Shown here piece after piece: positions 140 to 63,972 of a stretch of DNA of 64,000 bases. The first letter of the stretch is position 1, and each line of letters begins with the position of its first letter. Below the pieces are notes generated by a model. That model did no database searches, was not told the origin of the DNA, and saw only the letters and a list, made by a program, of their open reading frames with translations. The stretch comes from Botryllus schlosseri (lineage: Eukaryota): assembly GCA_051294905.1 (NCBI GenBank), contig CM119374.1, forward strand, positions 20,894,001 through 20,958,000, read 5' to 3'. A program made the translations under genes and the position numbers.

Positions 140-3100
140 CTTAAGTAATTTAGATTACAGATGAGTTGTATCGTATTCATGATAGCTAAAATTCATCAGT
201 TGTTATATCATACCGATATATCATTATCGTGAAGCACCATATTTCCAATAAATTTGATAAATATGATTGGTCAGACTAGCTCCTTTACCATGTTAATAAG
301 ACTGGGAAATCTAGCAAGGCTGGATTCGTTTCTGATGCTTTATCTGCCTGTGTATATATGTAGGCATAATCACCAGCCATCTCCTGGGTTATTGATTTGT
401 TTGCAGATTGGACGCAATTTTTAAATTGACAAAGTTAATTGACTAAATCTTAAAGGACTTTTGCACGATTTGAACAAAACAGGGGCACACCAGGAAACAT
501 GTCTGCTTATAAATATTTTGGTAATTTTAAAGTTATGATGACCCATTATCTTATCCAGCTTAACCTTGCCCCAAACGTACCATACCATGCTAAATTAGAA
601 ACCCAGTTCGCGGGCCGCACACCACTCAAAATTAGCATTTATTCACGGTCAGCACAAATGCTTTGTTATCGATTGTTGATGTACAATGTTCTTTCCAATT
701 TTCTACTAGTTACTGACGATTGCCCCTGACGAGTGTCAGTCGAAAATATCCGGGTTCATTTCAATATGAATATAATGTTCAATTGTATATTGAAGTTCTC
801 TACCTCCAAGACGCTCTAAAAACGCTTCATGTCAAGACTGGCAATAAAATATGGACATATTGATCACATCTAGCTGCATTTTCACATCCAGTGTGGGTGA
901 TTGGAAAATATTCATTTGATGTATTCTATTTTTCTATTTACCATAGCAGATGTTTCTTTATAAAAACTGAAGGCATGAATTTTATTTGTATTTCCAACAT
1001 AGACGTAAAACGGAAGTGGAATAGTGATCATTCCGTAAATAGGCCTCTTGCTAACAACGGAAACATTCCTCTCACCGGTTAGGCAGTTGCTAATGGTAAC
1101 AACTGAGCTTTCGCACTGTGAATTAACAGCTTTGATCTCGACCGAGTACGACGAGCCAGATACCAAATCGCAGATCTGTGTCTCGGTGACATTTCTGTCC
1201 ACGACCCTCTCGCCGACAACGCTGATCTTGAAATTGTCCTGAGCCGACGTGAAATTGACTCCGATGCAAGTCGCGCTTGCCGGGCCACATACCGCGCTGG
1301 TGACAGGTGGCGGACCTGGAACGAAAAACAGGATTGACTGTGTAATCGGAAAATCAATCATGACCGGAGCTGGTACGCAAGCAGAAGTAGAAGTATCCTT
1401 GTAGATTTCTACACAAGTACAAGTAGAAGAAGAGATATCCAAGTAGGTAAAAAAAGAAAGCACTCTAGGCCTAGTTCTGCCTATCGGCCGGAAACGGTCT
1501 GGTAGAAGTAGGAGTAACCACTTCAGTAACTAAACGTAGAAGTAGGCCACTTTGTTTCTGACCATCTCTGATTTCGACCATTTGTACTTGCTACCGTCTT
1601 GAGGTTTTGTCCCCTTTTTTACGAGAGGGCTAAAAAGGGGAGATAGGTGTTTCATAAAAATTTGACAGAGAAGGTAATTGAGAGAATTTATTGTGTTGGT
1701 CATCTTTCTAGATTCTCATTTTACTGTTACTGGGTTTGTTGTAGGACTAATTACGAATTTTGTCAATTTGAATCAGTACAGCGGATTCGACATTCGGACA
1801 CATTTTTTAAACTTTTGGATTGTCATTTCAGAATATAATTCAACCTTCAAGTCTACATTTAAGATTTTATTTTGGATAAGCATTAGACCTATAACCATAA
1901 ATCTGTTATTACCGCTAGTTCAATTAAATATTATAAAAAACGTGAAAAAAGGATTTTATGGATGCCGTCCCAAAGCCCTGGTGATTGATTTGATAATTGA
2001 GACTTACACGTTAGTTGCGGCAGTGTAAACAGGTTCTTCCCACCAGCTGATACTCGAACCAGGTATTCAGATCCAGGGACAAGTGATTCGATCACGGTAG
2101 ATGTAGTGGTCTGTTAATGAAAGGCCACAATAATGTACACATGAAATTTTTGATGAAAATCTAGTATTAAAATTTGGTTTTTGTTACACACAGAGAATTG
2201 TGTGCGAATAACGCACAAAATTGGCTGTATGTTGAATCATATGGGAATACTAATGGTAGTTTGATATTACCTAAGATCGAGAAGATGAAGATGAATTCGG
2301 TTCATTAAATTACTCATACCCTGGTATTTACTTCCACTTTTGGAATATTTCGAGTACAAATAATTTTAAAATTAGAAGTTTGGAGGATTATGTTAGATCA
2401 TGAATTCATGCTTAAAGTATTTCATTAATTCACAATAAAATCACAAGAAAAATCATTTCATTTTCTGTTATTCTATGTAAATGTTACTAGACAGAATCGA
2501 GTTAGGATTTTTCTGAAATTTAATTTGTCACGATAATATTTGGATTTATTGACTTATAAAACATTTCCTGTTCTAGAGTTTCGAATTCAGATCTGAATCC
2601 AAAATTAATTTGATATCATGTCCCTAGACATGTCCAATATCCACTCCGATTAACTGTTCCAATTAAACGTTTTGAGATTTGAAATTCAAAATCGTCTTCA
2701 CCCAAGGTTTCAATATAGCGCCTTACCTGTTCTCCCAAAGATGTGCCATCCAACGTTACATCATATGCAGCAGCACTCTTGTAAGCATTCCAGGATAACG
2801 CGAAAGTGGTTGTAGTCACGGAACCAACGCTCCAAATTTCTGAAACAGACTTATCTTCAGACTGCGTTGCGATAATAACATTAGAATCAATATACTTGAA
2901 TCGATGGCCGAGGAATACAGAGACATCTTGGTGGTTTTGTAAGCGACAGTCACATTGTAGCGGTTCGTTATAGGATTCGGCGCGGGTATGAATGTATCTG
3001 CATTCGATGTGGGGATTTCTTGTGTTCCAGCTTCGGAGGTGTATTTAACAATGTATGTAGTTGCGATTTCCGGAGTAATAACAACGGCGTCAAATTCCAC

Positions 3101-24100: not shown

Positions 24101-27100
24101 CGTGGTTCCATAATCATCAGTACTGGGAGCTGTAACACTTGCCGAAGGGGTTGTAGATGTATCATTGCTCACATAGTCAGCTGTGGTTTCATATTCAGCA
24201 GTACTTTGATCTGTCACACTTTCATCAGTGGTAGATGTATCATTATTCGGAACATTCCTTGCATTTCCAGAAGAGGCTGTAGACGTAACATTGCTTGCAA
24301 GGTCAGTTGTGGTTTCATATTCAGCAGTACTGAGATCTGTGATATTTTCGGAGGAGATTGTAGATGTAACATTGCTTGCAAGGTCAGTTGTGGTTTCATA
24401 TTCAGCAGTACTGAGATCTGTGATATTTTCGGAGGAGGTTGTAGATGTAACATTGCTTGCAACTTCGGTCGTGGTTCCATAATCATCAGTTCTGCGATCT
24501 GTAACATTTTCGATGGGGGTTGTCGATGTAACATTGCGTGCAACTTCGGTCGTGGTTCCATAATCATCAGTACTGGGATCTGTAACATTTTCGATGGGGG
24601 TTCTCGATGTAACATTGCTTGCAACAGTAGTTGTGGTTTCATACTCATCAGTACTTGGATCTGTAACACTTGCCGAAGGGGTTGTAGATGTATCATTGCT
24701 CGCATAGTCAGCTGTGGTTTCATATTCAGCAGTACTTTGATCTGTCACACTTTCATCAGTGGTAGATGTATCATTATTCGGTACATTCCTTGCATTTCCA
24801 GAAGAGGCTGTAGACGTAACATTGCTTGCAAGGTCAGTTGTGGTTTCATATTCAGCAGTACTGAGATCTGTGATATTTTCGGAGGAGGTTGTAGATGTAA
24901 CATTGCTTGCAACTTCGGTCGTGGTTCCATAATCATCAGTACTGCGATCTGTAACATTTTCGATGGGGGTTGTCGATGTAACATTGCGTGCAACTTCGGT
25001 CGTGGTTCCATAATCATCAGTACTGGGATCTGTAACATTTTCGATGGGGGTTCTCGATGTAACATTGCTTGCAACAGTAGTTGTGGTTTCATACTCATCA
25101 GTACTTGGATCTGTAACACTTGCCGAAGGGGTTGTAGATGTATCATTGCTCGCATAGTCAGCTGTGGTTTCATATTCAGCAGTACTTTGATCTGTCACAC
25201 TTTCATCAGTGGTAGATGTATCATTATTCGGTACATTCCTTGCATTTCCAGAAGAGGCTGTAGACGTAACATTGCTTGCAAGGTCAGTTGTGGTTTCATA
25301 TTCAGCAGTACTGAGATCTGTGATATTTTCGGAGGAGATTGTAGATGTAACATTGCTTGCAAGGTCAGATGTGGTTTCATATTCAGTAGTACTGAGATCT
25401 GTGATATTTTCGGAGGGGGTTGTAGATGTAACATTGCTTGCAACCTCGGTTGTGGTTTCAAAATCATCAGTAGGATCTGTAACATTTTCGGAGGGGGTTG
25501 TAGATGTAACATTGCTTCCAAGGTCAGTTGTGGTTTCATATTCAGCAGTACTTGGATCTGTCACACTTTCATCAGTGGTGGACGCATCATTATTCACAAT
25601 ATTTCTTGCATTATCTGAAGGTGTGGTTGATGTAACATTGTTTGCAGCGTCAGTTGGGGTTTCATATTCAGCAGTACTGAGATCCGTAACATTTTCCGAG
25701 GGGGTTGTAGATGTAGCATTGCTTGCAACCTCGGTTGTGGTTCCAAAATCATCAGTAGGATATGTAACATTTTCGGAGGGGGTTGTAGATGTAACATTGG
25801 TTGCAAGGTCAGTTGTGGTTTCATATTCAGCAGTACTGAGATCTGTGATATTTTCGGAGGAGGTTGTAGATGTAACATTGCTTGCAACTTCGGTCGTGGT
25901 TCCATAATCATCAGTACTGCGATCTGTAACATTTTCGATGGGGGTTGTCGATGTAACATTGCGTGCAACTTCGGTCGTGGTTCCATAATCATCAGTACTG
26001 GGATCTGTAACATTTTCGATGGGGGTTCTCGATGTAACATTGCTTGCAACAGTAGTTGTGGTTTCATACTCATCAGTACTTGGATCTGTAACACTTGCCG
26101 AAGGGGTTGTAGATGTATCATTGCTCGCATAGTCAGCTGTGGTTTCATATTCAGCAGTACTTTGATCTGTCACACTTTCATCAGTGGTAGATGTATCATT
26201 ATTCGGTACATTCCTTGCATTTCCAGAAGAGGCTGTAGACGTAACATTGCTTGCAAGGTCAGTTGTGGTTTCATATTCAGCAGTACTGAGATCTGTGATA
26301 TTTTCGGAGGAGGTTGTAGATGTAACATTGCTTGCAACTTCGGTCGTGGTTCCATAATCATCAGTACTGGGATCTGTAACATTTTCGATGGGGGTTGTCG
26401 ATGTAACATTGCTTGCAACATCGGCTGTGGTTTCATACTCATCAGTACTGAGATCTGTGATATTTTCGGAGGGGGTTGTAGATGTAACATTGCTTGCAAG
26501 GTCAGTTGTGGTTTCATATTCAGCAGTACTTGGATCTGCCACACTTTCATCAGTGGTGGACGTATCATTATTCAGAATATTTCTTGCATTTGCTGAAGGA
26601 GTGGTTGATGTAGCATTGTTCGCAACGTCAGTTGTGGTTTCATATTCAGCAGTACTGAGACCCGTAACATTTTCCGAGGGGGTTGTAGATGTAACATTGC
26701 TTGCAACCTCGGTTGTGGTTCGAAAATCATCTGTAGGATCTGTAACATTTTCGGAGGGGGTTGCAGATGTAGCATTGCTTGCAACAGCAGTTGTGGTTTC
26801 ATACTCATTAGTGCTGGGATCTGTAACATTTGCTGGAGGCATTGTGGAGGTAACATTGTTTGCAACCTCGATTGTAGTTCCAAAATCATCAGCACTTGAG
26901 TCTGTAACATTTTCGGTGGGAGTAGTAGATGTAACATTGCTTGGAGCCTCGGTTGTGGTTCCATAATCTTCAGTACTGAGATCTGTAACATTTTCGGACG
27001 GGATTGTTGATGTAACATTGCTTGCGACCTCGGTTGAGGTTCCATAATCATCAGTACTGGGATCTGTCACAATTCCCGAGGAGGTTGCAGATGTTGCATT

Positions 27101-30100
27101 GCTCGCAACCTCAGTCGTAGATTCATAACCATCAGTGCTAGGATCTGTCACACCTTCAGCTGTAGTGTAAAAGTCATTTTCTCCTGTTGATTGAATTGTA
27201 GAGACGGGTTCTGTCGTAACTATATCATCGGTTGACGTTTCTGTGTATCAACAATAATAACATTTCAATGTCATGTCTCATGCTTGGATAGGCATGCGCA
27301 ATTTTGAATTCTAATGGTCAAACCAAACTAAATATTGGGGCCTATTTAAAACTATTGGCTCCCACCATGCTCATAATACAATATTGAAGGCAACAATAGC
27401 ACATGCAGAGTTGGCATCATTTTGTGCACATCAAGCGCTGCGCTGACTGTTTTTAGTTGTAAAATATCTTTGTCCAATAAAAATGATACCCACTTGCAGG
27501 AAAAGATGCGTCCAGCACGTAATCAGGCGTGAATGTGGTTTAGAAATATTTTGTTGCATGTCAACATAATCACTCTGCCCTGAAACAGGCACCTTTATTA
27601 TCTGCATGATATCGGTGCGTCAAATATTCGTTGACGAATTCCCACAAGCATCAAATTGTCCGATGTATCGTCAGTAAAGAGAAGTATATTTTACTGAGTC
27701 GTATAGAAATATTAAATACGCCCTGCTTTCCTTTTATGTCAGTTACGCTAATTTTTCTTGCGTACCTCGGTTTGATATATTAGCAAGCAACAGGGCTTGC
27801 TTCGAGTGCATACATATAAGCGCATATGACTTTTGGTACAGCCTTACCAGTCCGGGTACGGATGGTCCAGTATATATTAGGGAGTATGGTGTTACCTATT
27901 TTAACCTTTCAACCTTTCCTACAAGATATAGAAATACACCACAAAGAAAAAAACGATGCTAGTACAAGCTACTGGCATTTCGAAGATATTTGGCGAGAAT
28001 CGTTGCGCAACCACAGGGTCAGGGAAGCATGCGACCAGGGTTGTAACCAAGTCACAAGGCTCCGAGTCACAAGTCAATCTCACTTTTATAGTTTTGACTC
28101 GAGTCAAGTCGAGTCATTTTCAATTCACCACCGAGTCAAGTCCAAGTCCAAGTCATGGTATCATGACTCGAGTCCGAGTCCAAGTCATAGTGTAGACTGC
28201 TCAGTTTTCAGTTAAGGTCTTGTTAAACCCACTTTTATAACTGTGTTTGGTGATATCAAATGGTTCACATTATAAGATACTAAATTTCCCTCACTTTTAG
28301 CAGTTTCTGGTCGCATTTTCAAATACTAGTAGGCTACCAATAGACGAAAGACCAATAGGGTGGCTGCGTTACTATTCTGTGAAATTACAATGAAATTTCG
28401 GTCTTGACCGTCTGAGTCTCGAGTCATATGACTTGGTTCGAGTCATGCGCAATGCAGGGCTGTAATGACTCGAGTCAGACTCGAGTCACGATTTTCGGAT
28501 GACTCGACTCGACTCGAGTCATTTTCTCAAAATACGGAAATGACTCGACTCGAGTCAATCTGTGTATTGACTCGACTTGGACTCGAGTCATTGCGCATGA
28601 CTCGAAGCAAGTCATTGACTCGAGATTGAGACGGCGAAGACCGACATTTCATTGTAATTTCGAAGCCAACACACTATTGGGAATTCGTTTGTTGGTACTA
28701 TGGTGCTTGAAAATGCGACCAGAAACTGCTAAAAGTGAGGAAAATTGATATATTATAAATGCGAACTATTCAATATCACCAAACATAGTTAAAAAAGTGG
28801 GTGTAGGAAGACTTTACCTGGAAACTTAGCAGTCAACACAATGACTTGGATTCGGACTCGAGTCATAATACCATGACTCGGACTCGATCCTCTGTTCGCT
28901 GACTTGGACTCGGACTTGACTCGGAGGGAATTGAAAATGACTCGACTTGACTGTCATGTTATCCACACTATGCTTAGCGCAACAGGATATTTCAATCGTT
29001 TCCAGTTGCAATGGATATTGCGCAAAGGAACCGCCCGATTAAAAGGCGCAAGTTACATAATGAAATCAATTGCCGCAAGTTTCGCCAGTCGTACGACTAC
29101 GTCTTAAGTGTCGTGCGATCAATTGACGCAGTGCGCTTTTAAGACGGAAGAATACGAATGCAACATTTAGGCATCCATCGGATCCTAGCTCTCATGCACG
29201 ATTTGAAAAAAAATGTTTACCAATCTTTCGCCACAAGACATCATTGATTTCAATGTCGACTACATAACATTACAGAGTGCTGAACGCTTTTCGTATGCCT
29301 GCATTCATTTGCATTCTGCGATCCTTGCGCCGGAAAATTCGTCTGTGATAGTGGTGATAATGAAATATATAGGTTTCGGAACTTGGTGATCGCAAACTTA
29401 TTCTTCCTTGACACGCTCGACTTTCGACTGTCAATTACAATTTTCGCCACAATGGGTCCTAAAACATGGATTGTCCAACATGCGGCACAATATATTACGA
29501 AACTATCGACGTCATGTGGAATGAGTAGAACATCGGTCACGTGATTGGTTGTAAAGATCGACTGACACGCGCCCTCTCTCTTCTCGGCCTGTGCTGATTG
29601 TGAAATTCACAAATTATATCTGGAATGTATCGTTTTGATCGTATCGAAATTTTGTGTCGGAAAGTAATTTGAGTCTAGCTAGTCTATGTTAGATGGGTCT
29701 GCGCCGTAAGGGTTCGGTATACTCTTTTCGGCAAATACACGTATTCGTCGATACTCCATAGCCATGTTGCAGAACCTAAAATACTACAATTAGGGTACGA
29801 AATTCGCGGAGACCGAGAATCTACTACATTCTACGCTACACAGACAGTATGCCGTTTTCGTTACCGCCCCTTGAAGTGTTTCCAGTTGCGCCTCTGTGTA
29901 TGGCCGCTGATCAGGTGTTTGTAGGTTTGTTATTGGTATTCATGGTGTTTGTCGACTACAATGGTCATGGTTATTTACGCCAGGCAGATTTTCTTGATTT
30001 AGATTCCGTAGCTGCCGACTTGTAGCACGACCCACTTCTAGCCTACTTGATACCTAGAAAAATAGAATGGGTCTGCTTAGCTGACCACTTCAGGTCGGCT

Positions 30101-39100: not shown

Positions 39101-42100
39101 TGACCATATATCTGCTGCCGATCAATGAATTGTTTGACGAATTCATTTCATACTGTTTATTTACTCGGCAAGTTGAACCAATATCGACGCAAATATACGT
39201 AACAGAATGGGATTTTAGAGGTTACGGTTGCGGTTTTGGCGGTTTATTTGCGAAAGCCGCCCTTTACCCGGATCGTTTGCGTAATGTCGGTCATATACTA
39301 CGAGAGGTGTGAATCGTAAGTAGATCGTAGATGACGTTAAGTTTTTAGAATTTCGTAAATACCAATAACTGCAATATCACTCAAGCAGTCTCTACGTTGT
39401 ACCGGTGCGTATCAATTTGTCATCGATGACTCAGCAATGCCTTGCAGTTACTGATGACGAAACGCGTCAAGAAATTGCTGAAAATCGCGCGGAAACGCAA
39501 GATTATAGGAATATAGCTGCAATGCCGTTCGGCTGGAAATAGATTTATGACGTTTTGTCGCACCTGCGACATTTGTCATGTCACGAGTGTCACACGAAGT
39601 CTCCGCACCACCTCGCCTACTTAAAAACCACACGAACCCGATCAAAATATTGAGCTCACGTTCAAGACACGCGCAACGCCGCGGTTGTAACCTGATATCG
39701 CTATCGCGAAGGAAACTTTCATCCACTTGATTATAGGACTGTGCGACAACTGTTATGGTTGAAACAATTTTAAAGATTCGCATCACGTTGTCACCGTTTC
39801 GTGTCGCGCTCGGCGTGTGACCCGGCCTAGTTCGCTCCAAGTCTAAACGTTCGGAAAAGTTATGTTATGAAATTATGAGTTAGGGTTGGACACAATGATT
39901 TGAGTATAATCCAATCCAAATCGAGTATTACTGGCAATGATTCGAATAGGGTAATTAGAATGAGACGAATTTTTAGAGTAGGCCTACTGAAATTATACGC
40001 CCTTGTCACAAAGAATTTTACTATGAGCGAGAATTATCGCTTCGACACTTTCTTCCCATCTGAGGAATCGTGAAACCTCGATTGTCCGTGCTTGAGCAAT
40101 TACAATATGTCCCACAAAGCTACGGACATTAGTGAAAACGAAATTTCTGCAGTCGTTATCTACTTCAAGCATTTACACAAAGCTCAATGAGATAACGGTG
40201 GTAAAAACTAACACATGATTTTAAATGTGGTATACAACTAGCATCATTTTCCTTTGTGGTCACCTAAAACGTACATGTTGGAACTTTTCTAACCATTTAT
40301 ACTGTCATGACGTCACAACGAATTCTACTCGACTTCACCCAGTCGCGTTATGCCTTGAATTAGTTTACAGAATTATTCGAATGGATGCGGGTGCTATGCG
40401 GAATCCTACGGGGGAAATTGTGTCGACAGGTTTTTAAAGGCGTATCGCGAATGATTTCTTAACTAGCCTAGAGCTTCTTGGAGGTACAGAACTTCAATAT
40501 ACAATTGAATAGTATATTCATATTGAAATGAACCCGAATATTTTCGGCTGACACTCGTCAGGGGTAATCGTCAGCAACTAGTAGAGAGCTTCTTGGAGGT
40601 ACAGAACTTAATATACAATTGAATATAATATTCATATCGCAATGAACCCGAATATTTTCGGCAGACAGTCGTCAGGGGTAATACTAGTTGCAGACGATTA
40701 CCCCTGACGAGTGTCAGTAGAAAATATTCGGTTTTTTTTTTCAATTTGAATATACTATTCTATACTATTATCATTAGCATAGAATAGTATTATCATACTA
40801 TTAGTAGAGATTTGGTAAGAACATTGTATATCAGCAATCGTATCACAAAATATGACGTCACCAGCATGAAATGAGATCTTAAATAAGAGAGCGTTAAATG
40901 TACTATTCTACTTCAACATTATTGTAAGATAGTACACGAACTCCTTTTGTAGACAAAGCTTGGGGCGATATATTTTGATAAAGGTCGACTCCGTGGCACA
41001 CAGATGAAAGTATGAGCGGCCACTTACGATGACGCGAAATCTGTCGTATCGATAATTTTTCGCACAAGCTGGATTATCCAACAGATGTTTGCCAATGGCA
41101 GAAGTTATGGCCTTTGAACGCTCAGCGTCAAGCTTGAGCGGATGAGTCAAGGGTGAACTTTTCACCGAGCGTGATGCACGCGTTTAGGGACATACCGGTT
41201 TATGCGTTTGCAGGTTTATGCGTTTTCGTTTCGTTGGGAGGGGCCGCTCACACTTTCATCTGTGTGCCTTGGAGTCGACCTTCATCAAAATACATTAGCC
41301 CCAGCTTTGTCTACAAAAGGATTTCGTGTACCATCTTAAAATAGAACATTGAACGTTCTCTTATTTGAGATCTCATTTCATGCTGGTGACGTCATAGTTT
41401 GTGATACGATTGTTGATATACAATGATCTTTCCAATTCTGGACTAGTTGCTGACGATTACCCCTGACGAGTGTCAGCCGAAAATATTCGGGTCCATTCCA
41501 ACTATTCAATTAACTCGCCCAATCAACGTTCAATTCAGGTCGAGTCAATCAATTTCACAACACAAACACATTTGCGACCTTCTCATTAACGACAAGCTAC
41601 CGCATCCGTCTTTACGAAGGTTGAATATTCGCCTGATTGGTATTGCTGGAAGCAGGATGTTAGATTTACGGGCGGTTAATTCACGAATCGCGAGCGTTAC
41701 ACGAGTCCACCAGGGCTCCTAGCCCACGAAATTTATACGATGTATTTATGTTACTATAACATTTGAGTGCATCATGCCAGGCAATTGGATGTTTGTACCT
41801 ATATAATTTGACGTTACGGGCGTACCCTAATCCTTCCTTGTAAGCGAAAATCGGAGTGTCACGGAGACATGGACCTCAAAAGATTTGCTGCTATTTCGAA
41901 CTGGCAGCTATGATACGATAGTACGCTTACTTTCAATTGAAGTTATAATTTAATTTGACCAATAATGTTGTCTTGTGTATACGAGAGACTCATGCGACCA
42001 CAAAAAAGCAATTTCTTGGATCTAAAGATTCGCCGACTGCACTGCCCAGGGAAGGCTAATGGCATCCAATAAAAGCAAGGGAGATTCCAAACCAATAGCT

Positions 42101-43605
42101 ATCTCTCAGTGATGTAATTCATTTTGAGTGCCCATATACATCATACACAAACAGTTTGTGACCATTATCACATTCCGTGCCGTGAAATTGTGCCAATTAC
42201 ACTATATTTCCGCTATTTCGAGGGAACCATCACAATTCCCTGCGTACAACTTATTACTACGGTTCTATGACTTTTACGACATTTATTAAACTACTGAAGT
42301 AGTGAAAATTCAACCATTACTGTGTTTTATAAAGCATACGATAAATGATGATAGCGTGACACAAGAAACAGAAAACATGGAATATACTTCATGCCCGATT
42401 TTGAGTTAGACCGAGTATTTGCCGACCATATCGCTGGGTTAATACATTAATCGCGTTTTATCAACGCACATAGCGAATACGTCGGCTTTTATGTATATTT
42501 AAGTTAATAGCATAAAGTAGAAGAAACATATTTACGTGTGACGTAATAACAATTGATAGAACTTCGACGCTTTCACGCTAACAGCTAGCCCTGCTGCTGT
42601 CGACCAGTTAACGAGAACACATACCGCAATACCAATGAAATAGTAGGAACAAAACAAGTGTGGCCTGCGGACTAATAAATTAATTTTACGCGTTAGTGCT
42701 TCTGTGTTGCGTTGTGAAGTATTGGAATCGTAGAGGGCGTAAGTGAATTTACAGGCAGCGCGAGCCTTGGCGTGCTCCACAACTTATTCTTGGGTGTTCA
42801 ACTCATGCGATGTTACTTTCAAGCAGAATTCATTTCATAATTGTAACAAGGCCTTCTTATCTTAAGCTTGAATTCAGACATCATACTGGTAAAACATTTT
42901 CAGCGCCCGATGTCAGATTGTAAGCTGTCGTTCAGGCTTATCGCATCATGCCCGATGCCCGAGCGTCCAATTTTGTTGGGATCCCTTTTTATTGCAAATG
43001 CATCAATGCAATAAATTAATCTTTCGGCCACAGCATTATAATATTCGGGCGTTTTGTCGTATAATGCCCCACTCGTGAGACCACAATCAGTGCATCATCC
43101 AAGACGAAAATAAAGCCATTGCTACCAACGAAATTCTGCCCTCTATTTTAAGTACGACAAATTGATTTGGAGCATACAGTTCGCACCAACACAGCGTAAT
43201 AAAGTGCGACACCACTGCGAAGGTTTGACTGCAGAGAAATTCAGTGAAGTTGATATCAAATCTGAACCACTTCGGCAAGGTTGAAAGTCGAGGCAGCCAG
43301 TGGTGAAGTTGAAATGAAAATTGTACCTATAAACCCAGATGTCCAAGATCGTAATACTGGGTACTGGGCACTTTTTTCTGATGTGTAGTATGCCTGGAAC
43401 GTGAAAAATAATCCACACACGCTTGGACGCATCAATTCCTGTATACTTGAAGGGCGAAATCGCATGCGCATGCTCGCATTACACAGCAAGGTTGTGCTCT
43501 AACTTATCATTTAAAAAGTCTGTACTCACGTGCGTGTGACGTATGAAACGCAACTATCATGGTGAGGATGAACAGCCACCGTACGGTGGGTGCATGAAAA
43601 GCCAT
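17..43605 (-). CDS. Giant spliced gene (3'-partial): signal peptide - mucin - 20x cbEGF - FN3 - SEA - 5x FN3 - cbEGF; secreted or cell-surface glycoprotein, ~3,290 aa in window
   Basis: 35 exons reconstructed by hand with AG acceptors, GT donors and consistent phases. The frame is open across all joins and the domain motifs are recognisable. It continues beyond position 1. The links of the two 5'-most exons are inferred. Confidence 0.88.
655..825 (+). mobile_element. Solo fragment of the Penelope-like pLTR seen at 40470-41500
   Basis: Colinear similarity to 41400-41500 and to the reverse complement of 40470-40580. Confidence 0.8.
722..755 (+). ncRNA. Minimal type I hammerhead motif, probably inactive (U16.1->C)
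   Basis: GCCC CUGACGA GUGUCAGUC GAAA AUAU CC GGGU. Confidence 0.6.
1076..1315 (-). CDS. FN3 domain 6 (Cys-containing, single exon)
   Basis: PPPVTSAVCGPASATCIGVNFT...DLVSGSSYSVEIKAVNSQCES; 240 nt; ttccag acceptor, gtgaga donor. Confidence 0.82.
2008..2839 (-). CDS. FN3 domain 5; exons 2727-2839 and 2008-2110
   Basis: VGSVTTTTFALSWNAYKSAAAYDVTLDG..Q|TTTSTVIESLVPGSEYLVRVSA; phases 1-0-1. Confidence 0.82.
2896..3156 (-). CDS. FN3 domain 4 (single exon)
   Basis: GPATVSGVSIYNVTTSGFNVEFD...YNVTVAY; the donor at 2895 (gtatat) is the best phase-1 candidate. Confidence 0.8.
3731..4003 (-). CDS. FN3 domain 3 (single exon)
   Basis: GPKNLKVSVLNGSCLTVKFD...LTPETSYDFIVSA; 273 nt, phase 1-1. Confidence 0.9.
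4548..4955 (-). mobile_element. 5'-truncated CR1/L2-type LINE (ORF2 C-terminus, 3'UTR, (TTGAA)n tail)
   Basis: Frameshifted SIKYAGRDL.NSI...SSSLSTFKSKYKHF.LNKY* resembles a LINE ORF2 end; microsatellite tail; same family at ~13000, ~48620 and 61297. Confidence 0.75.
5152..5502 (-). CDS. FN3 domain 2; exons 5389-5502 and 5152-5316
   Basis: APPENLTVSDVTTSSFTLNWD...YEVK|VDY...KDLPSNT...VRAV...SNVSEEVTFTT. Confidence 0.88.
6076..6399 (-). CDS. SEA domain; exons 6240-6399 and 6076-6179
   Basis: RPFEPAFNDLSSPLSIAFTDQL...IRIRIVMLL|PGSTIAVSEI fits the SEA pattern (F...L.D.sS...F and the GSVVV-like site); 60-nt phase-2 intron. Confidence 0.75.
7201..7600 (-). CDS. FN3 domain 1; exons 7509-7600 and 7201-7390
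   Basis: ...RERSARLEI...EYE|IELLDTSG...RDLTPNTTYNARARIV...SEWSVEISFQT; the LxPxTxY motif; phases 1-0-1. Confidence 0.82.
7667..7798 (-). CDS. cbEGF exon 20 (DIDECASEETNDCSLPPAGVCTNEPGAFTCSCGEGYEGDGKNCL)
   Basis: 132 nt, AG/gtatga, phase 1-1. Confidence 0.88.
8285..8407 (-). CDS. cbEGF exon 19 (DIDECALGLHSCHANADC...)
   Basis: 123 nt, AG/GT, phase 1-1. Confidence 0.9.
9320..9442 (-). CDS. cbEGF exon 18 (DFDECQLEIDDCEQNSTC...)
   Basis: 123 nt, AG/gtaagt, phase 1-1. Confidence 0.9.
9645..9767 (-). CDS. cbEGF exon 17 (DLDECAAASDNCNDDANC...)
   Basis: 123 nt, AG/GT (weak gtcaca donor), phase 1-1; not visible in this frame in the ORF track. Confidence 0.87.
10494..10616 (-). CDS. cbEGF exon 16 (DIDECATNMADCHSEANC...)
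   Basis: 123 nt, AG/GT, phase 1-1. Confidence 0.9.
11262..11384 (-). CDS. cbEGF exon 15 (DIDECADQTDDCDSNANC...)
   Basis: 123 nt, AG/GT, phase 1-1. Confidence 0.9.
12162..12284 (-). CDS. cbEGF exon 14 (DINECTTDLHNCDSKADC...)
   Basis: 123 nt, AG/GT (weak gtcctg donor), phase 1-1. Confidence 0.87.
12795..12917 (-). CDS. cbEGF exon 13 (DVDECVDESHDCNEHADC...)
   Basis: 123 nt, AG/GT, phase 1-1. Confidence 0.9.
12998..13112 (-). mobile_element. LINE 3'UTR fragment (same family as 4548-4955)
   Basis: Direct similarity to 4583-4685. Confidence 0.7.
13563..13685 (-). CDS. cbEGF exon 12 (DIDECTGETHNCNVNASC...)
   Basis: 123 nt, AG/GT, phase 1-1. Confidence 0.9.
13993..14115 (-). CDS. cbEGF exon 11 (DIDECTAGTHNCDINAEC...)
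   Basis: 123 nt, AG/GT, phase 1-1. Confidence 0.9.
14493..14615 (-). CDS. cbEGF exon 10 (DINECTTEIHDCDANASC...)
   Basis: 123 nt, AG/GT, phase 1-1. Confidence 0.88.
14728..14850 (-). CDS. cbEGF exon 9 (DIDDCTDGFHDCDDNAEC...)
   Basis: 123 nt, AG/GT, phase 1-1; paralog of exon 5. Confidence 0.9.
14916..15038 (-). CDS. cbEGF exon 8 (DINECSSGVENCHMNADC...)
   Basis: 123 nt, AG/GT, phase 1-1; paralog of exon 4. Confidence 0.88.
15280..15402 (-). CDS. cbEGF exon 7 (DIDDCTTGTHDCSSSANC...)
   Basis: 123 nt, AG/GT, phase 1-1; paralog of exon 3. Confidence 0.9.
16140..16262 (-). CDS. cbEGF exon 6 (DINECATGTSNCHDNADC...)
   Basis: 123 nt, AG/GT, phase 1-1; paralog of exon 2. Confidence 0.9.
16639..17437. 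mobile_element. hAT-type MITE, TIR TAGGGCGATTTTTT
   Basis: Perfect 8-bp TSD CTAATCAG (16631-38, 17438-45); second copy inverted at 49916-50766. Confidence 0.9.
18003..18125 (-). CDS. cbEGF exon 5 (DIDDCTDGLHNCDDNAEC...)
   Basis: 123 nt, AG/GT (weak gttcag donor), phase 1-1. Confidence 0.85.
18191..18313 (-). CDS. cbEGF exon 4 (DINECSSDVDNCHMNADC...)
   Basis: 123 nt, AG/GT, phase 1-1. Confidence 0.88.
18463..18585 (-). CDS. cbEGF exon 3 (DIDDCATGTHNCSSSANC...)
   Basis: 123 nt, AG/GT, phase 1-1. Confidence 0.9.
19244..19366 (-). CDS. cbEGF exon 2 (DIDECATGTSNCHDNADCENING...)
   Basis: 123 nt, AG/GT, phase 1-1, D-I-D-E-C consensus. Confidence 0.9.
19449..19950. mobile_element. MITE with degenerate (A)GGGCTGG TIR and ACTCGA-rich subterminal repeats
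   Basis: Flanked by the direct repeat AGTTATT(A); absent from the paralogous intron near 16340. Confidence 0.8.
20266..20690. mobile_element. Truncated copy of the CATAG foldback element
   Basis: Left arm matches 30470 onward; internal palindrome centred near 20550; right arm incomplete. Confidence 0.8.
20974..21099 (-). CDS. EGF exon 1 (LSDECELETHNCDPDASCNDTADSYVCTCNTGFSGNGTSCE)
   Basis: 126 nt, AG/GT, phase 1-1, 6-Cys EGF. Confidence 0.9.
21901..27240 (-). CDS. 5,340-nt mucin exon (1,780 codons; Thr/Ser/Asp/Glu/Asn-rich 27-aa repeats)
   Basis: ORF 21821..27151 extended 5' to the acceptor tgatacacag|AA; donor A|gtgagt at 21900; phase 1-1; units like SENITDLSTAEYETTTDLASNVTSTIS. Confidence 0.92.
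28036..28952. repeat. GACTCGAGTC-rich TIR element(s) in inverted arrangement (arms ~28102-28453 and ~28590-28952)
   Basis: The arms are reverse complements; starts CAGGGTTGTAAC; a related fragment lies at ~12415-12530. Confidence 0.8.
29925..30055 (-). mobile_element. 3' fragment of the tRNA-derived SINE
   Basis: Matches the 3' half of 37924-38193 and 53564-53814. Confidence 0.75.
30470..30983. mobile_element. Foldback (near-fully palindromic) element, CATAG...CTATG termini, P-superfamily-like
   Basis: ~250-bp inverted arms; 7-bp TSD GTGGAAT/GTGGAAG. Confidence 0.8.
31104..31369. mobile_element. hAT-type MITE, TIR CAGAGGTGGTC, CTACTT-rich
   Basis: Perfect 8-bp TSD CACGTAAC; longer family members at ~46280-47087 and 54730-55900, fragments elsewhere. 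Confidence 0.9.
32929..33368. mobile_element. MITE, TIR TAGGGCAAGTTTTT, TTGCAAC repeats
   Basis: Inverted termini visible; TSD only partial (CTGATAAC/GTGATATA). Confidence 0.75.
33570..33602 (-). CDS. 33-nt micro-exon (Q)SDEEGSGAGE
   Basis: Pyrimidine-rich ctcaatttag acceptor, gtaggt donor, phase 1-1, in frame with the signal and mucin exons; acidic Ser-Gly motif. Confidence 0.6.
34685..35650. mobile_element. hAT MITE (CAGGGGTCACC...GGCGACCCTG) with a nested CAGTGGTTC MITE at 34964-35286
   Basis: 8-bp TSD ATCTAGGC/ATCTAAGC with central TA; the inner element has TIRs but no clear TSD. Confidence 0.8.
37924..38193 (-). mobile_element. tRNA-derived SINE, full length
   Basis: tRNA-like head, (AAC)n tail, 12-bp TSD ACGCGAGTTGGT. 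Confidence 0.88.
40532..40565 (-). ncRNA. Minimal type I hammerhead ribozyme, core intact
   Basis: ACCC CUGACGA G-UGUCAGC-C GAAA AUAU UC GGGU; predicted cut after C at 40536. Confidence 0.8.
40646..40679 (-). ncRNA. Hammerhead motif, tandem copy with G10.1->C
   Basis: ACCC CUGACGA CUGUCUGCC GAAA AUAU UC GGGU. Confidence 0.6.
40700..40733 (+). ncRNA. Hammerhead motif, locally inverted copy with C11.1->A
   Basis: ACCC CUGACGA GUGUCAGUA GAAA AUAU UC GGUU. Confidence 0.55.
40908..41225 (-). pseudogene. Penelope-like GIY-YIG endonuclease C-terminal fragment
   Basis: RINRYVPK (cf. RIxQHVP), then after a frameshift SAIGKHLLDNPACAKNY...F.VI...RS.FHL...E..FIK...PKLCLQKEFVY.L*. Confidence 0.85.
41459..41492 (+). 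ncRNA. Minimal type I hammerhead ribozyme, core intact
   Basis: ACCC CUGACGA G-UGUCAGC-C GAAA AUAU UC GGGU; predicted cut after C at 41488. Confidence 0.8.
43530..43605 (-). CDS. Putative first coding exon: signal peptide MAFHAPTVRWLFILTMIVAFHTSHA
   Basis: ATG, hydrophobic core, S-H-A cleavage motif, consensus donor C|gtgagt in phase 1 matching the downstream phase-1 exons. Confidence 0.7.
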
Positions 43606-57159: not shown

Positions 57160-57578
57160 CTACTATTACCGAGAATGCTATTACCGAGATGGACATTACC
57201 GAGAATGGTATTACCGAGAATGGACATTACCGAGAACGGACAATACCGAGAACGGACATTACCGAGAATGGACAATACCGAGAATGGACATTACCGAGAA
57301 TGACATTACCGAGAATGCTATTACCGAGAATGGACATTACCGAGAATGCTATTACCGAGAATGGACATTACCGAGAACGGACATTACCGAGAATGGATAT
57401 TACCGAGAATGGACAATACCGAGAATGGACATTAGCGAGAATGCTATTACCGAGAATGGACATTACCGAGAATGCTATTACCGAGAACGGACATTACCGA
57501 AAATGGACAATACCGAGAATGGACATTACCGAGAACGGACTTTGTCGAGAATGGACATTACCGAGAATGTATATTACC
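57160..57578 (+). repeat. Left TIR array: ~26 units ATTACCGAGAATG(GAC/CT), 15-16 bp
   Basis: Directly visible; unit count estimated from length. Confidence 0.95.
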
Positions 57579-62090: not shown

Positions 62091-63559
62091 ATACCCGGGC
62101 ACTGTGGGACGCTCTGTGTGCAACGCGGTACATAGCACGTACGAGTCGTGGCATAGAACTCGCGGGCCTTGTTGCACGGCCTAGTCTAGAGACGGACGAT
62201 AACACTGGCCCCAAAAAAATCCATCGCCGTAGCCTCAGTCGAAATCAGAACTGGAAGTAAAGCAGAGTCAATGTTGAGGAAGTGCTACCTTCTTGTTTTA
62301 GTTCCAACAGTAGGCTATATCTAATTCATGTAAAAATATCAATCATCATGGTGGCTCATTAGCTCGCACAAAACTACGGGAATTACTAATTAATAACATC
62401 GATCTCGCCTTCCGCCACCTCATTTTGTCGCTTGCCTTTTATATTCTCTGCTTTACTTTTCATTCAGTGTGCATCAGGGCTCTTCAAAAATGACTTTTTT
62501 TCTCAAATCGTACTGGCTACTTGATATGAAATATATCGTACTGTGCAAACTCCTTTTAATTGCCAATAGCTCACTGATACTAACATTTTGCTGCTGAGAG
62601 ATGTTATGTTGGGGTTATGTTTGCGCAAAATTGGGATTTGAATTTCTTTGTACCCGCAAAATTGTAAACAATAGTTTGGGACAGAAATTACAGACTATAA
62701 ATTCCTAATCCGTCCCAGCAAAGTTATTGAGACCTCGCCACGAAATATATTTTCTTCTGTGATACACAATAACCACTATTCTAGATTTTCGAAAATCACT
62801 TTCTCAATATTGGGGCCATATGTTGCGAATATAAACAAAGATATCGTCGGAAGCTTTTACGCGTTAATAGTATATTCGCGACCACCTATCTTTGAGGAAA
62901 CATATTTTAGGTAGTCGTTCATATCAAATCTCAGGCGCGGATTTTCAAGCCACTGCCACGTATTTCAAGAAATGCAGCTACAGAATTCGTTTTGAAATAT
63001 TAAAAGTCTACCAAATTACGACATATATCATGGTGATATTTCAGGAAAATACAGTTTTTCCGGTTTAGCACTCTACAGTTAATGTGTGCACAAGACTGAT
63101 GACGGTTGCGTGATGACTGAGCTAAATTTGACTTTACCTTGAGTCCATAAGCGCGAAGTTTCAGCCTGCTGGTGCCCGGCGTTTATCTTGATCTCCCAAC
63201 GTCATACCATAAAAACTCCTTGTAAGTGCACTTGGTGACATTTCACATATTAAATCGCTTCATTTTCAACGTGTTCTCGTAACACGTGTAGCAAAACAAA
63301 TATAGGTCATTGCGACACTGTCTGTCTAGCTACATCACTCATTTTTTCAACATACGTAAAACAATGATGGAAATTTCGTAGGTTTCGTAAAAACGAGTGT
63401 AAAAGTCGAAAATTGCGATTTTTCAAACGACTATTCCGAGCCCGATCGGTTCGGTTAGTCTGTACAGCAAAGGGGGAGATCGCTTATCGCGTCGACACCC
63501 TCGGGTGGTATCTGCGACGTGAGGTCGCCGAGCATTAGTGCGCCAAAGTGTATTGTCGG

Positions 63560-63972
63560 TACTGTCCATTCTTGGTAATGGTCATTCTCTGTAATAGCAT
63601 TCTCGGTAATGTCCATTCTCGGTTATGGTCATTCTCGGTAATGGTATTCTCGGTAATAGACATTCTCGGTAATAGCTTTCTCGGAAATAGCCATTCTCGG
63701 TAATAGTCGTTCTCGGTAATAGCATTCTCGGTAATGTCCATTCTCTGTAATGGTCATTCTCGGTAATTGTATTCTCGGTAATAGACATTCTCGGTAATAG
63801 TATTCTCGGTAATAGCCATTCTCGGTAATAGCCATTCTCGGTAATAGTATTCTCGGTATTGTCCATTCTCGGTGATGTCCATTCTCGGTATTGTCCATTC
63901 TCGGTAATGTCCATTCTCGGTATTGTCCTTCTCGGTAATAGCATTCTCGGTAATAGCATTCTCGGTATTGTC
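63560..63972 (-). repeat. Right TIR array: the same unit, inverted
   Basis: CATTCTCGGTAAT units; the distance from the element end to the first TACCGAG (13 nt) is equal on both sides. Confidence 0.95.

What the first reader, a model, noticed from the sequence alone, without database searches (positions are those of the whole stretch)
40466..41500. Cluster of minimal hammerhead ribozymes in tandem and inverted Penelope-like pLTRs
Seen: four copies of ACCC-CUGACGA-G(N7)C-GAAA-AUAU-UC-GGGU flank a GIY-YIG remnant. Two are in 115-bp tandem units on the minus strand, one is inverted, and one is on the opposite pLTR arm. Helix III is only the palindrome AAUAUU. Established: Penelope-like elements carry minimal type I hammerheads with palindromic helix III that are thought to cleave as dimers, and tandem hammerhead repeats underlie retrozyme-type small circular RNAs. 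Inference: tandem units could yield ~115-nt self-processed monomers. The cluster sits in intron 1 of the mucin gene, and the intact copy at 40532-40565 is on the host sense strand, so it could cleave the pre-mRNA.
Basis: partly seen in the sequence, partly recalled or inferred. Interest (0 to 1): 0.8.

Follow-up and report, generated by a model that had tools for sequence, protein, structure and literature searches.

The report
Penelope relics carrying pseudoknotted hammerhead motifs
This is a dead, scrambled pile of tail ends of a very abundant Penelope-like jumping gene; each tail carries the family's small self-cutting hammerhead RNA motif, which has an unusual second helix, and nothing suggests it acts on the host gene here.

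Summary
The four motifs exist at the stated places (0.05 expected by chance), and a fifth, decayed copy lies at 702-759. Only two (A, 41459-41492 +; B, 40532-40565 -) are intact. C has C at position 10.1 and no upstream box, D has A at 11.1 and a helix I mismatch, and E has C at 16.1.

The cluster (about 40471-41520) is a typical Penelope-like (PLE) insertion relic. It holds two head-to-tail 5'-truncated 3' ends, an inverted one, and two inverted fragments that keep the C-terminal part of the endonuclease.

The motif is a real type I minimal hammerhead. There is no helix II hairpin. The 7-nt loop pairs with a box 3 nt upstream of helix I. Related PLE families from other assemblies keep this layout with different sequences, and covariation beat 0 of 500 shuffles.

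- The 115-bp tandem junction is specific to this locus.
- In a double hammerhead, cutting B's site needs C's damaged core.
- In the predicted host-sense RNA fold, every copy is paired to an antisense copy.
- An RNA-seq run gave no reads on the unique flanks and no pile of read ends at the cut sites.
- The intron 1 claim could not be tested.

Earlier reports of this scan described the same family on other DNA of this genome.

The parts
40471..40587 (-). Unit 1: a 5'-truncated PLE 3' end made of box, hammerhead B and a ~65-nt tail. The family's 3' terminus lies at 40470/40471.
   Evidence: 100% identical to L035:993-1075 over 83 nt. Family reads and contigs diverge at 40470-40476 and at 40587 (table 7).
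40532..40575 (-). Hammerhead B, intact. Box GCUGACG 40575-40569, linker 40568-40566, helix I ACCC 40565-40562, core CUGACGA 40561-40555, G10.1 40554, loop UGUCAGC 40553-40547, C11.1 40546, GAAA 40545-40542, palindrome AAUAUU 40542-40537, C17 40536, GGGU 40535-40532.
40586..40688 (-). Unit 2: a second 5'-truncated 3' end holding hammerhead C (40646-40679). It has C at 10.1 (40668), loop UGUCUGC and no box in cis. It is cut off at the palindromic ACTAGT (40683-40688), where the inverted copy starts.
   Evidence: 90.6% to L035
40683..40768 (+). Inverted copy D. Box GCAGACG 40690-40696, motif 40700-40733, then part of the tail. It has A at 11.1 (40719) and a helix I mismatch (GGUU), and its box and loop no longer match.
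   Evidence: The family majority letter at 40719 is C (table 3).
40769..40801 (.). Short scrambled tail fragment (small inverted repeat I8) between copy D and the left arm.
40802..41234 (-). Left arm: the C-terminal ~105 codons of the PLE endonuclease region (one stop) plus the 3' UTR. It ends just before the place where box and hammerhead would follow.
   Evidence: tblastn with P0001 aa130-235, 69% identity, E 3e-47; L035:640-1001, 78.5%. The 85-aa ORF gives 772 hits by phmmer.
41212..41520 (+). Right arm: the last ~46 codons of the endonuclease (one stop), the 3' UTR, box, hammerhead A and a decayed, shortened tail.
   Evidence: tblastn with P0001 aa191-236, 80%; L035:782-1057, 84.7%. nhmmer extends the tail to ~41557.
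41449..41492 (+). Hammerhead A, intact and identical to B. Box 41449-41455, helix I 41459-41462, core 41463-41469, G10.1 41470, loop 41471-41477, C11.1 41478, GAAA 41479-41482, C17 41488, GGGU 41489-41492.
662..815 (+). Solo 5'-truncated copy E of the same family. Box ACUGACG 712-718 and loop UGUCAGU 734-740 carry a compensatory change. Helix I is GCCC/GGGU. Position 16.1 is C (750), which breaks the palindrome.

Best explanation
[quoted passage not shown] Five 5'-truncated 3' ends lie here. Two are head to tail on the minus strand. One is inverted against them. Two longer fragments lie head to head and keep the end of the endonuclease ORF. This is the standard PLE layout of partial tandem plus inverted truncated copy.

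Every family member carries a type I minimal hammerhead about 65 nt from its 3' terminus. Its parts are a 4-bp helix I, the core CUGANGA...GAAA, a single G10.1-C11.1 pair, and a 7-nt loop II that pairs with a 7-nt box three bases upstream of helix I. That pseudoknot takes the place of the helix II hairpin. Helix III exists only as the palindrome AAUAUU.

Inferred mechanism in active elements: two motifs, on a tandem transcript or on two RNAs, pair through the palindrome. The core of one then cuts the site of the other. This trims multimeric or read-through PLE transcripts.

At this locus the motifs are passengers. Two copies are still intact by sequence and three carry lesions at essential positions. 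When the cluster is transcribed as one RNA, each copy is predicted to be buried in a long duplex with an antisense copy.

Shown: the anatomy, the family membership, the covariation, the abundance and the predicted fold. Inferred: catalysis, dimer use, and lack of function at this locus.
For: Motif count against chance.
Repeat anatomy.
PLE identity: phmmer gives 772 hits. The best, P0001, is 78% identical. P0111 (841 aa) and P0115 carry RVT_1 upstream of the matching C-terminus.
Independent copy: L035 holds ORF end, 3' UTR, box, hammerhead and tail, with box and hammerhead identical to A and B.
Same layout in related PLE families, found through protein homology only: L036, L037, L038, L041, L044, L045, L046. 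Their boxes and loops differ (UCGCA/UGCGA, GCAAC/GUUGC, GUCGAU/AUCGAC, UCUGACG/UGUCAGA). So do helix I (UCCC/GGGA, AGAU/AUCU, CAAG/CUUG) and the palindromes (AAGCUU, AACGUU, AAGUUAACUU).
Pair counts on alignment A2: 88.6% of cells paired against 72.3% in shuffles, 11 of 16 pairs changed on both sides, 0 of 500 shuffles as high, slid controls 26-39%.
Box-loop complementarity against random windows of the same loci: 0.004-0.05 for each independent family.
Abundance and 3' terminus: summed word depth up to 6.2 million against ~88 on the flanks. Family copies end at 40470.
No function here: zero RNA reads on the unique flanks, 99% of reads on the repeat run on into unlike sequence, and no pile of read ends.
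Folds: -127.6 kcal/mol with z -15, and -553.8 kcal/mol, with every copy paired to an antisense copy.
Literature: PLE hammerheads and dimers (PMC4209133, PMC6765202); the typical insertion structure (PMC8557442).
Against: No Rfam hammerhead model matches, even at E up to 10. No cleavage was measured, and published PLE minimal hammerheads cut poorly in vitro even as dimers (PMC4209133). The nested minimum-energy fold of a monomer is two hairpins that sequester both halves of the core. The six A-U pairs of the palindrome are worth only about -0.2 kcal/mol. L042 has the motif but no box-loop pairing. My motif scan required a paired helix I and a palindromic helix III, so covariation in those two helices is partly selected for. 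Only the box-loop pairing and the position 3-8 pair were free of that filter. One RNA-seq run, read at about 6%, is thin evidence that the locus is not expressed.
Confidence: 0.8

Rival explanations
1. An intronic ribozyme that acts on the host gene. Copy B, in the sense orientation of the mucin-like gene, cuts the pre-mRNA and lowers or regulates its expression.
For: The large Ser/Thr-rich repeat ORF (21821-27151) is on the minus strand, as are copies B and C. B is intact by sequence. Conserved intronic hammerheads exist in amniotes (PMC3088659).
Against: Placement in an intron is unproven. The cluster lies 13 kb upstream of the only recognisable exon. The RNA run gave zero reads on the unique flanks. 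B is 100% identical to an unrelated copy, L035, so it looks like a recent family insertion and not a conserved, exapted element. In a double hammerhead, B's site must be cut by the partner's core, and the only cis partner, C, has C at 10.1 and no box. In the host-sense fold, B pairs with the antisense of A over ~65 bp and C pairs with the antisense of D. A preprint reports that in vertebrates retrozymes are depleted from introns (10.64898/2026.07.22.740005, abstract).
Confidence: 0.04
2. A nascent mini-retrozyme. The 115-nt unit is cut out at two hammerhead sites, circularised and copied, so the tandem is the footprint or source of a small circular RNA family.
For: There are two head-to-tail units with one hammerhead each. 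The six bases CTAGTT that follow the tail at the unit junction also follow the last tail at 40461-40466 (D3), as if a third unit had started. Animal retrozymes are tandem type I hammerhead repeats thought to derive from PLE pLTRs (PMC7229834; 10.64898/2026.07.22.740005).
Against: Family reads and contigs leave the locus at 40587 and continue into the PLE 3' UTR, so the tail-to-box junction is not the family's usual arrangement (table 7). There are only 1.9 units, 91-92% alike. One is identical to the current family sequence and the other is 9% diverged, which fits separate events. Unit 2's core is damaged. Known retrozyme RNAs are ~170-400 nt (PMC7229834). No pile of read ends was seen at the cut sites (table 6). 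Other tandem pairs noted in this genome have different unit lengths (s1-281539, unchecked).
Confidence: 0.05
3. A hairpin double-stranded RNA locus. The nested inverted repeats make a long duplex when transcribed, and the duplex feeds small-RNA silencing of the family. The hammerheads play no part.
For: The predicted fold of the whole cluster is a nested double hairpin at -553.8 kcal/mol. The 311-nt inner part has z -15. Rfam's only weak hits are miRNA-precursor-like hairpins across the C/D foldback.
Against: There is no evidence that the locus is transcribed. No small-RNA data were examined. Inverted copies are a by-product of PLE insertion (PMC8557442), so the structure needs no function to explain it.
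Confidence: 0.08
4. A chance resemblance: the motifs are not hammerheads, and their conservation reflects some other role of the element's 3' end.
For: No Rfam hammerhead hit. No helix II hairpin. The loop can also pair with the core CUGAC in this family.
Against: Related families keep all invariant core positions while helix I, box and loop, and the palindrome centre change in compensating ways. The loop-core hairpin is not conserved in L036, L037 or L041, but the box-loop pairing is.
Confidence: 0.03

Closest known systems
Minimal type I hammerheads of Penelope-like elements (Cervera and de la Pena 2014, PMC4209133; reviewed in PMC6765202)
   Same: They sit in the 3'/pLTR part of an RT plus GIY-YIG PLE. 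Helix I is short (4 bp here, 4-5 published). The G10.1-C11.1 pair is conserved. Positions 15.2-16.2 are palindromic and there is no stable helix III, so dimers are expected. Copies lie in tandem and inverted arrangements. Sequence varies strongly between families, with compensatory changes.
   Different: The published motifs have a long helix II hairpin (7-8 bp) with an unpaired base between positions 9 and 10.1. Here only 9 nt separate CUGANGA from GAAA. No hairpin is possible, and the 5' strand of helix II is supplied by a box upstream of helix I.
[quoted passage not shown] 2011, PMC3088659, Figure 4 legend and text)
   Same: Stem II is reduced to one pair. A pseudoknot of about 6 bp linking the stem I and stem II sides is needed for activity there, and compensatory mutants rescue it. 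This shows that the design can be catalytic.
   Different: That ribozyme is type II, bacterial or metagenomic. Its pseudoknot joins loop I to the 3' tail after stem II, and it has a normal stem III and acts as a monomer. Here the motif is type I, the pseudoknot joins loop II to the 5' tail before stem I, and stem III is only a palindrome.
Animal non-LTR retrozymes (PMC7229834; 10.64898/2026.07.22.740005)
   Same: Tandem units each carry a type I hammerhead. They are proposed to derive from PLE pLTRs, and some need dimers.
   Different: Retrozyme units are ~170-400 nt, occur as families with a fixed unit, and are expressed as abundant circular RNAs. Here there are 1.9 units of 115 bp with a locus-specific junction, and no RNA evidence.
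Non-circularly permuted hammerheads (types SGC and CSG; PMC10085705)
   Same: Core helices are formed as pseudoknots and not as a simple three-way junction. A short linker joins the stem I and stem II strands directly.
   Different: There the three conserved blocks are reordered. Here the block order is the ordinary type I order, and only the 5' strand of stem II has moved.
Typical PLE insertion architecture (Craig et al. 2021, PMC8557442, Figure 2 legend)
   Same: It has partial tandems forming pLTRs, an inverted 5'-truncated copy next to them, a terminal 'tail', and a hammerhead near the 3' end. The same inverted pairs flank the ORF in L044 and L046.
   Different: None in kind. This copy is only more fragmented, and no RT region is left.

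Membership tests
Hammerhead ribozyme, type I | Conserved core CUGANGA ... GAAA and a cleavage site U-H (H not G) in type I order | tested here: met
   Four exact matches against 0.05 expected. The core columns are invariant across related families.
Hammerhead ribozyme, type I | Helix I formed by the sequences before the core and after the cleavage site | tested here: met
   ACCC/GGGU here; UCCC/GGGA, AGAU/AUCU, CAAG/CUUG and GCCA/UGGC in relatives; 97.7% of cells paired and all 4 pairs changed on both sides. Caveat: my scan required at least 3 of 4 pairs.
Hammerhead ribozyme, type I | Helix II hairpin closed by G10.1-C11.1 | tested here: not met
   The 10.1-11.1 pair is present in A, B and E (G-C; G-U or A-U in some relatives). 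The 7 nt between them cannot form a hairpin. They pair with a box upstream of helix I, 5-7 bp, with p 0.004-0.05 for each independent family.
Hammerhead ribozyme, type I | C3-G8 tertiary Watson-Crick pair in the core (known from crystal structures; my own knowledge) | tested here: met
Hammerhead ribozyme, type I | Match to a curated Rfam hammerhead covariance model | tested here: not met
   No hammerhead family was reported at gathering score or at E up to 10.
Hammerhead ribozyme, type I | Site-specific self-cleavage giving 5'-OH and 2',3'-cyclic phosphate ends | not testable with these tools
   Indirect evidence only: no pile of read ends at 40536 or 41488 in one ordinary RNA-seq run (table 6). 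That is weak negative evidence.
Penelope-like element (canonical, C-terminal endonuclease) | ORF with reverse transcriptase followed by a GIY-YIG endonuclease | tested here: inconclusive
   Only the last ~105 and ~46 codons remain here. Homologues with the same C-terminus carry RVT_1 upstream (P0111, P0115). Pfam GIY-YIG appears only as a faint hit on relatives and not on the window ORF.
Penelope-like element (canonical, C-terminal endonuclease) | Partial tandem (pLTR) and inverted 5'-truncated copies, with a hammerhead near the 3' end | tested here: met
   The same holds in L044 and L046. The description is in PMC8557442.
Animal non-LTR retrozyme | A family of tandem units of fixed length (~170-400 nt), each with a type I hammerhead | tested here: not met
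   1.9 units of 115 bp. Family reads leave the locus at the unit junction, 40587.
Animal non-LTR retrozyme | Abundant unit-length linear and circular RNA | not tested
   The single read-laying run showed no ends at the cut sites. No small-RNA or circRNA library was examined.

The most novel reading that the evidence does not exclude
The hammerhead of this PLE clade is a distinct, so far undescribed architecture. Helix II is reduced to the 10.1-11.1 pair and continued by a 5-7 bp pseudoknot with a box that lies 2-5 nt (usually 3) upstream of a 4-bp helix I. This is combined with an obligately intermolecular, palindromic helix III. Natural U3-A8 versions of the core occur in some lineages. If it is catalytic, it would explain why some PLE 'hammerhead cores' do not fit the stem-loop descriptors in use (PMC8557442, Methods). 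It would also extend the pseudoknot-dependent design known from bacterial type II ribozymes to animal retroelements.
Probability: 0.4. Interest if true: 0.6.

Novelty: new variant of a known kind. Interest (0 to 1): 0.42.

Why it matters
The cluster itself is ordinary. It is one more relic of a known retroelement class with its known ribozyme motif, and it should not be read as a regulator of the mucin-like gene.

What may matter is the ribozyme's build. The papers I could read describe PLE minimal hammerheads with a long helix II hairpin. This clade supplies one strand of helix II from upstream of helix I, and the pairing covaries across several families from different assemblies.

That has three consequences. 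Descriptor-based and Rfam searches will miss such motifs. The literature already lists PLE 'hammerhead cores' that fit no descriptor, and this layout is one candidate explanation. And it offers a small natural system, about 45 nt plus a partner, for testing how a pseudoknot and dimerisation together gate hammerhead activity.

Tried and rejected
- Rfam at gathering score and at E up to 10 gave no hammerhead. The only weak hits were miRNA-like hairpins caused by the C/D foldback.
- Pfam on the 85-aa remnant ORF found nothing. The word-indexed protein search with it found nothing either. Full HMMER was needed.
- An exact-pattern scan of metagenome contigs for the motif with a free loop gave 34 hits. 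All were unrelated bacterial coding sequence, and none belonged to the family.
- A search with the C-terminal 447 residues of the mucin-like ORF, meant to recover an annotated gene model and test the intron claim, gave no hit. Pfam on ten ORFs between and beyond the exon and the cluster found nothing credible. The intron claim stays untested.
- The bacterial promoter and terminator scan is not informative for an animal genome.
- MAFFT misaligned L036 and L037, whose loop and helix III lengths differ. I left them out of the counted alignment A2 and report their pairings from the script.
- L040's hit has an ordinary GGCU/AGCC hairpin helix II but no palindromic helix III, and its gene did not translate to the query. 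I left it out as possibly chance.
- L039 showed no motif.
- Lunse et al. (PMC5785218), the main paper on dimeric PLE hammerheads, is not held. I could not check whether it already describes the pseudoknot.
- I considered post-insertion selection on copy A's hammerhead, which has 0 changes in 51 nt on an arm 15% diverged from L035. I rejected it as unproven, because subfamily differences explain it and the private-mutation rate gives only p about 0.07.
Full report
OBSERVATION. The region was read directly. The pattern CTGANGA-N9-GAAA-N4-TH has exactly four matches in the 64-kb window: 40536-40561(-), 40650-40675(-), 40704-40729(+) and 41463-41488(+). Dinucleotide-preserving shuffles give 0.05 on average, and none of 100 reaches four. 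I call these copies B, C, D and A. Tandem Repeats Finder reports a 114-bp period with 1.9 copies at 40470-40682. The repeat finder shows the two direct units and the inverted pairs B/A (65 nt, 94%), B/D (58 nt, 90%) and C/D (38 nt, 87%). It also shows two long inverted arms, 40802-41039 against 41224-41445. BLAST and nhmmer of the unit against the whole window find one more copy, E, at 662-815.

ANATOMY. I used an independent copy of the same family as a yardstick. This is L035, a 1.2-kb metagenome scaffold that holds the ORF end, a ~90-nt 3' UTR, box, hammerhead and part of the tail. Against it the cluster resolves as follows.
- Unit 1 (40471-40587, minus strand) is 100% identical to L035 over 83 nt.
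- Unit 2 (40586-40688, minus) is 90.6% identical. It is cut off at a palindromic ACTAGT.
- Copy D starts at that ACTAGT in the opposite orientation (40683-40768, plus, 88.6%).
- A scrambled tail fragment follows (40769-40801).
- The left arm (41234->40802, minus) carries codons ~130-235 of the homologous protein with one stop, plus the 3' UTR.
- The right arm (41212->~41520, plus) carries codons ~191-236 with one stop, the 3' UTR, box, hammerhead A and a shortened tail.

All five pieces are 5'-truncated 3' ends. Craig et al. describe partial tandems, an adjacent inverted 5'-truncated copy and a terminal tail as the typical PLE insertion structure (PMC8557442, Figure 2 legend). Two related loci, L044 and L046, show the same inverted hammerhead pair around their ORF.

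WHICH ELEMENT. The 85-aa ORF at 40908-41165(-) has no Pfam hit, and the word-indexed search found nothing. A full phmmer search of 1.84 billion representative proteins gives 772 hits at E up to 0.001. The best is P0001 at 78% identity. P0111 (841 aa) and P0115 (587 aa) carry RVT_1 upstream of the matching C-terminus. P0001 and P0111 show the GYVGR-type endonuclease motif just N-terminal of the part preserved here. This is a canonical PLE with a C-terminal endonuclease. No reverse transcriptase piece is left in the window (P0111 tblastn).

IS IT A HAMMERHEAD? No Rfam hammerhead model matches, even at E up to 10. Read as a type I motif, A and B have these parts:
- helix I ACCC/GGGU;
- core CUGACGA;
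- G10.1;
- seven nucleotides UGUCAGC;
- C11.1;
- GAAA;
- the palindrome AAUAUU (15.1-16.1);
- C17, the cleavage site.

The seven nucleotides cannot form a hairpin. They are complementary over 7 bp (6 Watson-Crick plus one G-U) to GCUGACG, which lies three bases upstream of helix I. An earlier report of this scan (s1-231978) suggested this pairing, and I tested it independently.

I fetched genomic loci of eleven proteins found by homology to the endonuclease remnant, with no RNA criterion. I then looked 3' (or 5') of their ORFs. The same layout recurs: box, 2-5-nt linker, 4-bp helix I, core, one 10.1-11.1 pair, 6-9-nt loop, GAAA, palindrome, H, helix I. The sequences differ.
- L036: box UCGCA, loop UGCGA, palindrome AACGUU, helix I CAAG/CUUG.
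- L037: GCAAC/GUUGC, AAGUUAACUU, AGAU/AUCU.
- L041: GUCGAU/AUCGAC, AACGUU.
- L044 and L046: UCUGACG/UGUCAGA, AAGCUU, UCCC/GGGA.
- L038 and L045: variants of the L044 type.

Against all 14-nt windows of the same loci, box-loop runs as long as those observed occur at 0.004 (this family), 0.047 (L036), 0.027 (L037) and 0.006 (L041).

I counted pairs on a 12-sequence alignment (A2, 11 distinct rows) with the pseudoknot, helix I, the 10.1-11.1 pair, the C3-G8 pair and the palindrome written in. 88.6% of cells pair, against 72.3% in shuffles. Eleven of 16 pairs change on both sides. No shuffle of 500 reaches any observed measure. Sliding the partners by 1-3 columns drops pairing to 26-39%. Core columns U4, G5, A6, A9, G12, A13, A14 and A15.1 are invariant. 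Positions 3 and 8 are C-G in nine rows and U-A in two (L041, L045), never mixed.

Caveats. The scan required at least 3 of 4 helix I pairs and a palindromic helix III, so those two helices are partly selected for. The box-loop and 3-8 pairs were not. L042 has the motif without box-loop pairing. In this family the loop can also pair with the core's own CUGAC, but that alternative is not conserved in L036, L037 or L041.

I conclude that the motif is a genuine hammerhead of active PLE lineages, with helix II built as a pseudoknot.

STATE OF THE COPIES HERE. A and B are identical, and identical to L035, over box and motif.
- C has C at 10.1 and the loop variant UGUCUGC. It has lost its box at the inversion junction.
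- D has the box variant GCAGACG, A at 11.1 and a helix I mismatch. Family reads show C at the 11.1 position (40719, table 3).
- E has a compensatory box-loop change (ACUGACG/UGUCAGU) but C at 16.1.

Lesions at essential positions in three of five copies show that there has been no constraint after insertion. Across lineages the core is far more conserved than its surroundings. Among the dead copies it is not protected.

ABUNDANCE AND RNA. Runs of the same organism hold the stretch. I laid one raw RNA-seq run, one RNA contig set and two contig sets whose kind is not on record (probably DNA, judging by their even depth on the unique flanks) on 39800-42300 at 90% likeness.
- Summed word depth on the tail and hammerhead bin is 6.2 million, against ~88 on the unique flanks in X5. 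This is not a copy number, but it shows a very abundant family. Depth falls towards the ORF, as expected for 5'-truncated copies.
- Loose ends at 40470-40476 mark the family's 3' terminus.
- Loose ends at 40587 continue into the 3' UTR sequence. The tail-to-box junction of the tandem is therefore not the family's usual arrangement.
- In the raw RNA run the unique flanks have zero reads. 99% of reads on the repeats run on into unlike sequence, so they come from other loci. Both read orientations are equal.
- The table of places where many molecules begin or end is empty.

This is one ordinary RNA-seq run read at about 6%, so the negative evidence is modest.

(a) 115-nt monomers. In a double hammerhead the palindromes of two motifs pair. 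The enzyme strand of one (helix I 5' strand, core, helix II, GAAA) then assembles with the substrate strand of the other (16.x, C17, helix I 3' strand). This follows from strand continuity and from the published dimer model (PMC4209133, Figure 1A). On the minus-strand transcript, C's site would be cut by B's intact core, but B's site would need C's damaged core. Release of a unit needs both cuts. The junction is locus-specific. The two units differ in age: unit 1 is 100% identical to L035 and unit 2 is 90.6%. Known retrozyme RNAs are 170-400 nt (PMC7229834). One point stays in favour: the six bases CTAGTT that follow the tail at the junction also follow the last tail at 40461-40466.

(b) Cleavage of the pre-mRNA. 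The large Ser/Thr-rich repeat ORF (21821-27151) is indeed on the minus strand. But the predicted fold of the host-sense RNA is a nested double hairpin. The 311-nt inner part folds at -127.6 kcal/mol with z -15. The whole cluster folds at -553.8 kcal/mol. In that fold B pairs with the antisense of A, the two arms pair with each other, and C pairs with the antisense of D. No copy is free to fold or to dimerise.

(c) Intron 1. I could not test this. There is no homologue or gene model for the ORF, no recognisable coding sequence between 27 and 47 kb, and no RNA reads.

HOW IT MOST LIKELY WORKS. In active elements, transcripts that run through tandem or neighbouring copies contain two motifs. The box-loop pseudoknot (about -9.6 kcal/mol as a duplex) frees the core from its competing hairpins and sets helices I and II side by side. 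The weak palindrome (about -0.2 kcal/mol) makes cutting depend on a second motif close by. Each core then cuts the other's site. The element's true 3' end lies about 65 nt further on. It carries a terminal motif (TTCTGTACC..CCAA) shared by several families, so the cut separates that tail from the body. What this does for retrotransposition is unknown (PMC8557442 discusses this). All of this paragraph is inference from sequence, covariation and published work on related motifs. Published PLE minimal hammerheads cleave poorly in vitro (PMC4209133).

COMPARISON AND NOVELTY. The hammerhead-PLE association, the palindromic helix III, the dimer model and the tandem and inverted insertion structure are all known. 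Published PLE minimal hammerheads have a 7-8-bp helix II hairpin (PMC4209133). This clade does not. The nearest precedent for a one-pair stem II supported by a pseudoknot is a bacterial or metagenomic type II hammerhead, where the pseudoknot was shown to be essential (PMC3088659). Craig et al. mention PLE 'HHR cores' that fit no stem-loop descriptor (PMC8557442, Methods). I found no paper in the library that describes this pseudoknot in PLEs, but the key paper by Lunse et al. is not held. I therefore rate the cluster as an ordinary relic and the ribozyme build as a probable new variant of a known kind. Earlier follow-up reports of this scan reached the same reading of the family on other DNA of this genome (s1-231978, s1-229058, s1-286518). 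One of them (s1-229058) says this looks like a sea-squirt genome, which I did not verify.

Noticed in passing
window 21821-27151 (-): A 1776-codon open reading frame made largely of 81-bp (27-aa) Ser/Thr-rich repeats, nested in 162-, 369- and 450-bp higher-order periods; it looks like a mucin. Its non-repetitive C-terminal 447 residues have no detectable homologue in the 5.8-billion-protein index.
   Followed up: partly
L041:1150-1156, L045:919-925 (also L043 about 2304-2310): Three related PLE hammerheads have UUGANAA instead of CUGANGA. Positions 3 and 8, which pair in the active fold, have both changed (C-G to U-A). This looks like natural covariation inside the catalytic core.
   Followed up: partly
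window 40661-40667 (-) and 40690-40696 (+): Copy C's loop variant (UGUCUGC) is exactly complementary to copy D's box variant (GCAGACG). They lie on opposite strands and can never be in one RNA. This suggests both descend from a subfamily with a compensated pair, followed by rearrangement or conversion. Unexplained.
   Followed up: no
window 40461-40470 and 40576-40585: The bases after the family's 3' terminus at the left edge (AACTAGCCTA) resemble those at the tandem junction (AACTAGTAGA), as if a third unit had begun. This could be a template-jump footprint, a target preference or chance (about 1 in 4000 for the six-base match at that exact position).
   Followed up: partly
window 40471-40495; L042:2470-2493; L045:978-996; L046:2125-2139: The last ~20 nt of the element's tail (TTCTGTACC..CCAA...) are shared by PLE families whose hammerheads and UTRs otherwise differ. 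This may be a 3'-terminal recognition element for the reverse transcriptase.
   Followed up: no
L044:1333-1390(-) and 2157-2214(+); L046:1333-1390(-) and 2040-2097(+): In two related loci, identical hammerheads sit in inverted orientation on both sides of the endonuclease ORF fragment. This is the same inverted-copy architecture as in the window.
   Followed up: partly
window 57165-57578 and 63552-63967: Two ~410-bp arrays of a 16-bp unit in opposite orientation, about 6 kb apart.
   Followed up: no
window 40136-40387: Contigs of a related organism (run X6) cover both flanks of the cluster at about 1% divergence but give no depth on 40136-40387. The right-hand junction with hammerhead A (from 41472) is present there, so at least that part of the insertion is shared.
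   Followed up: no
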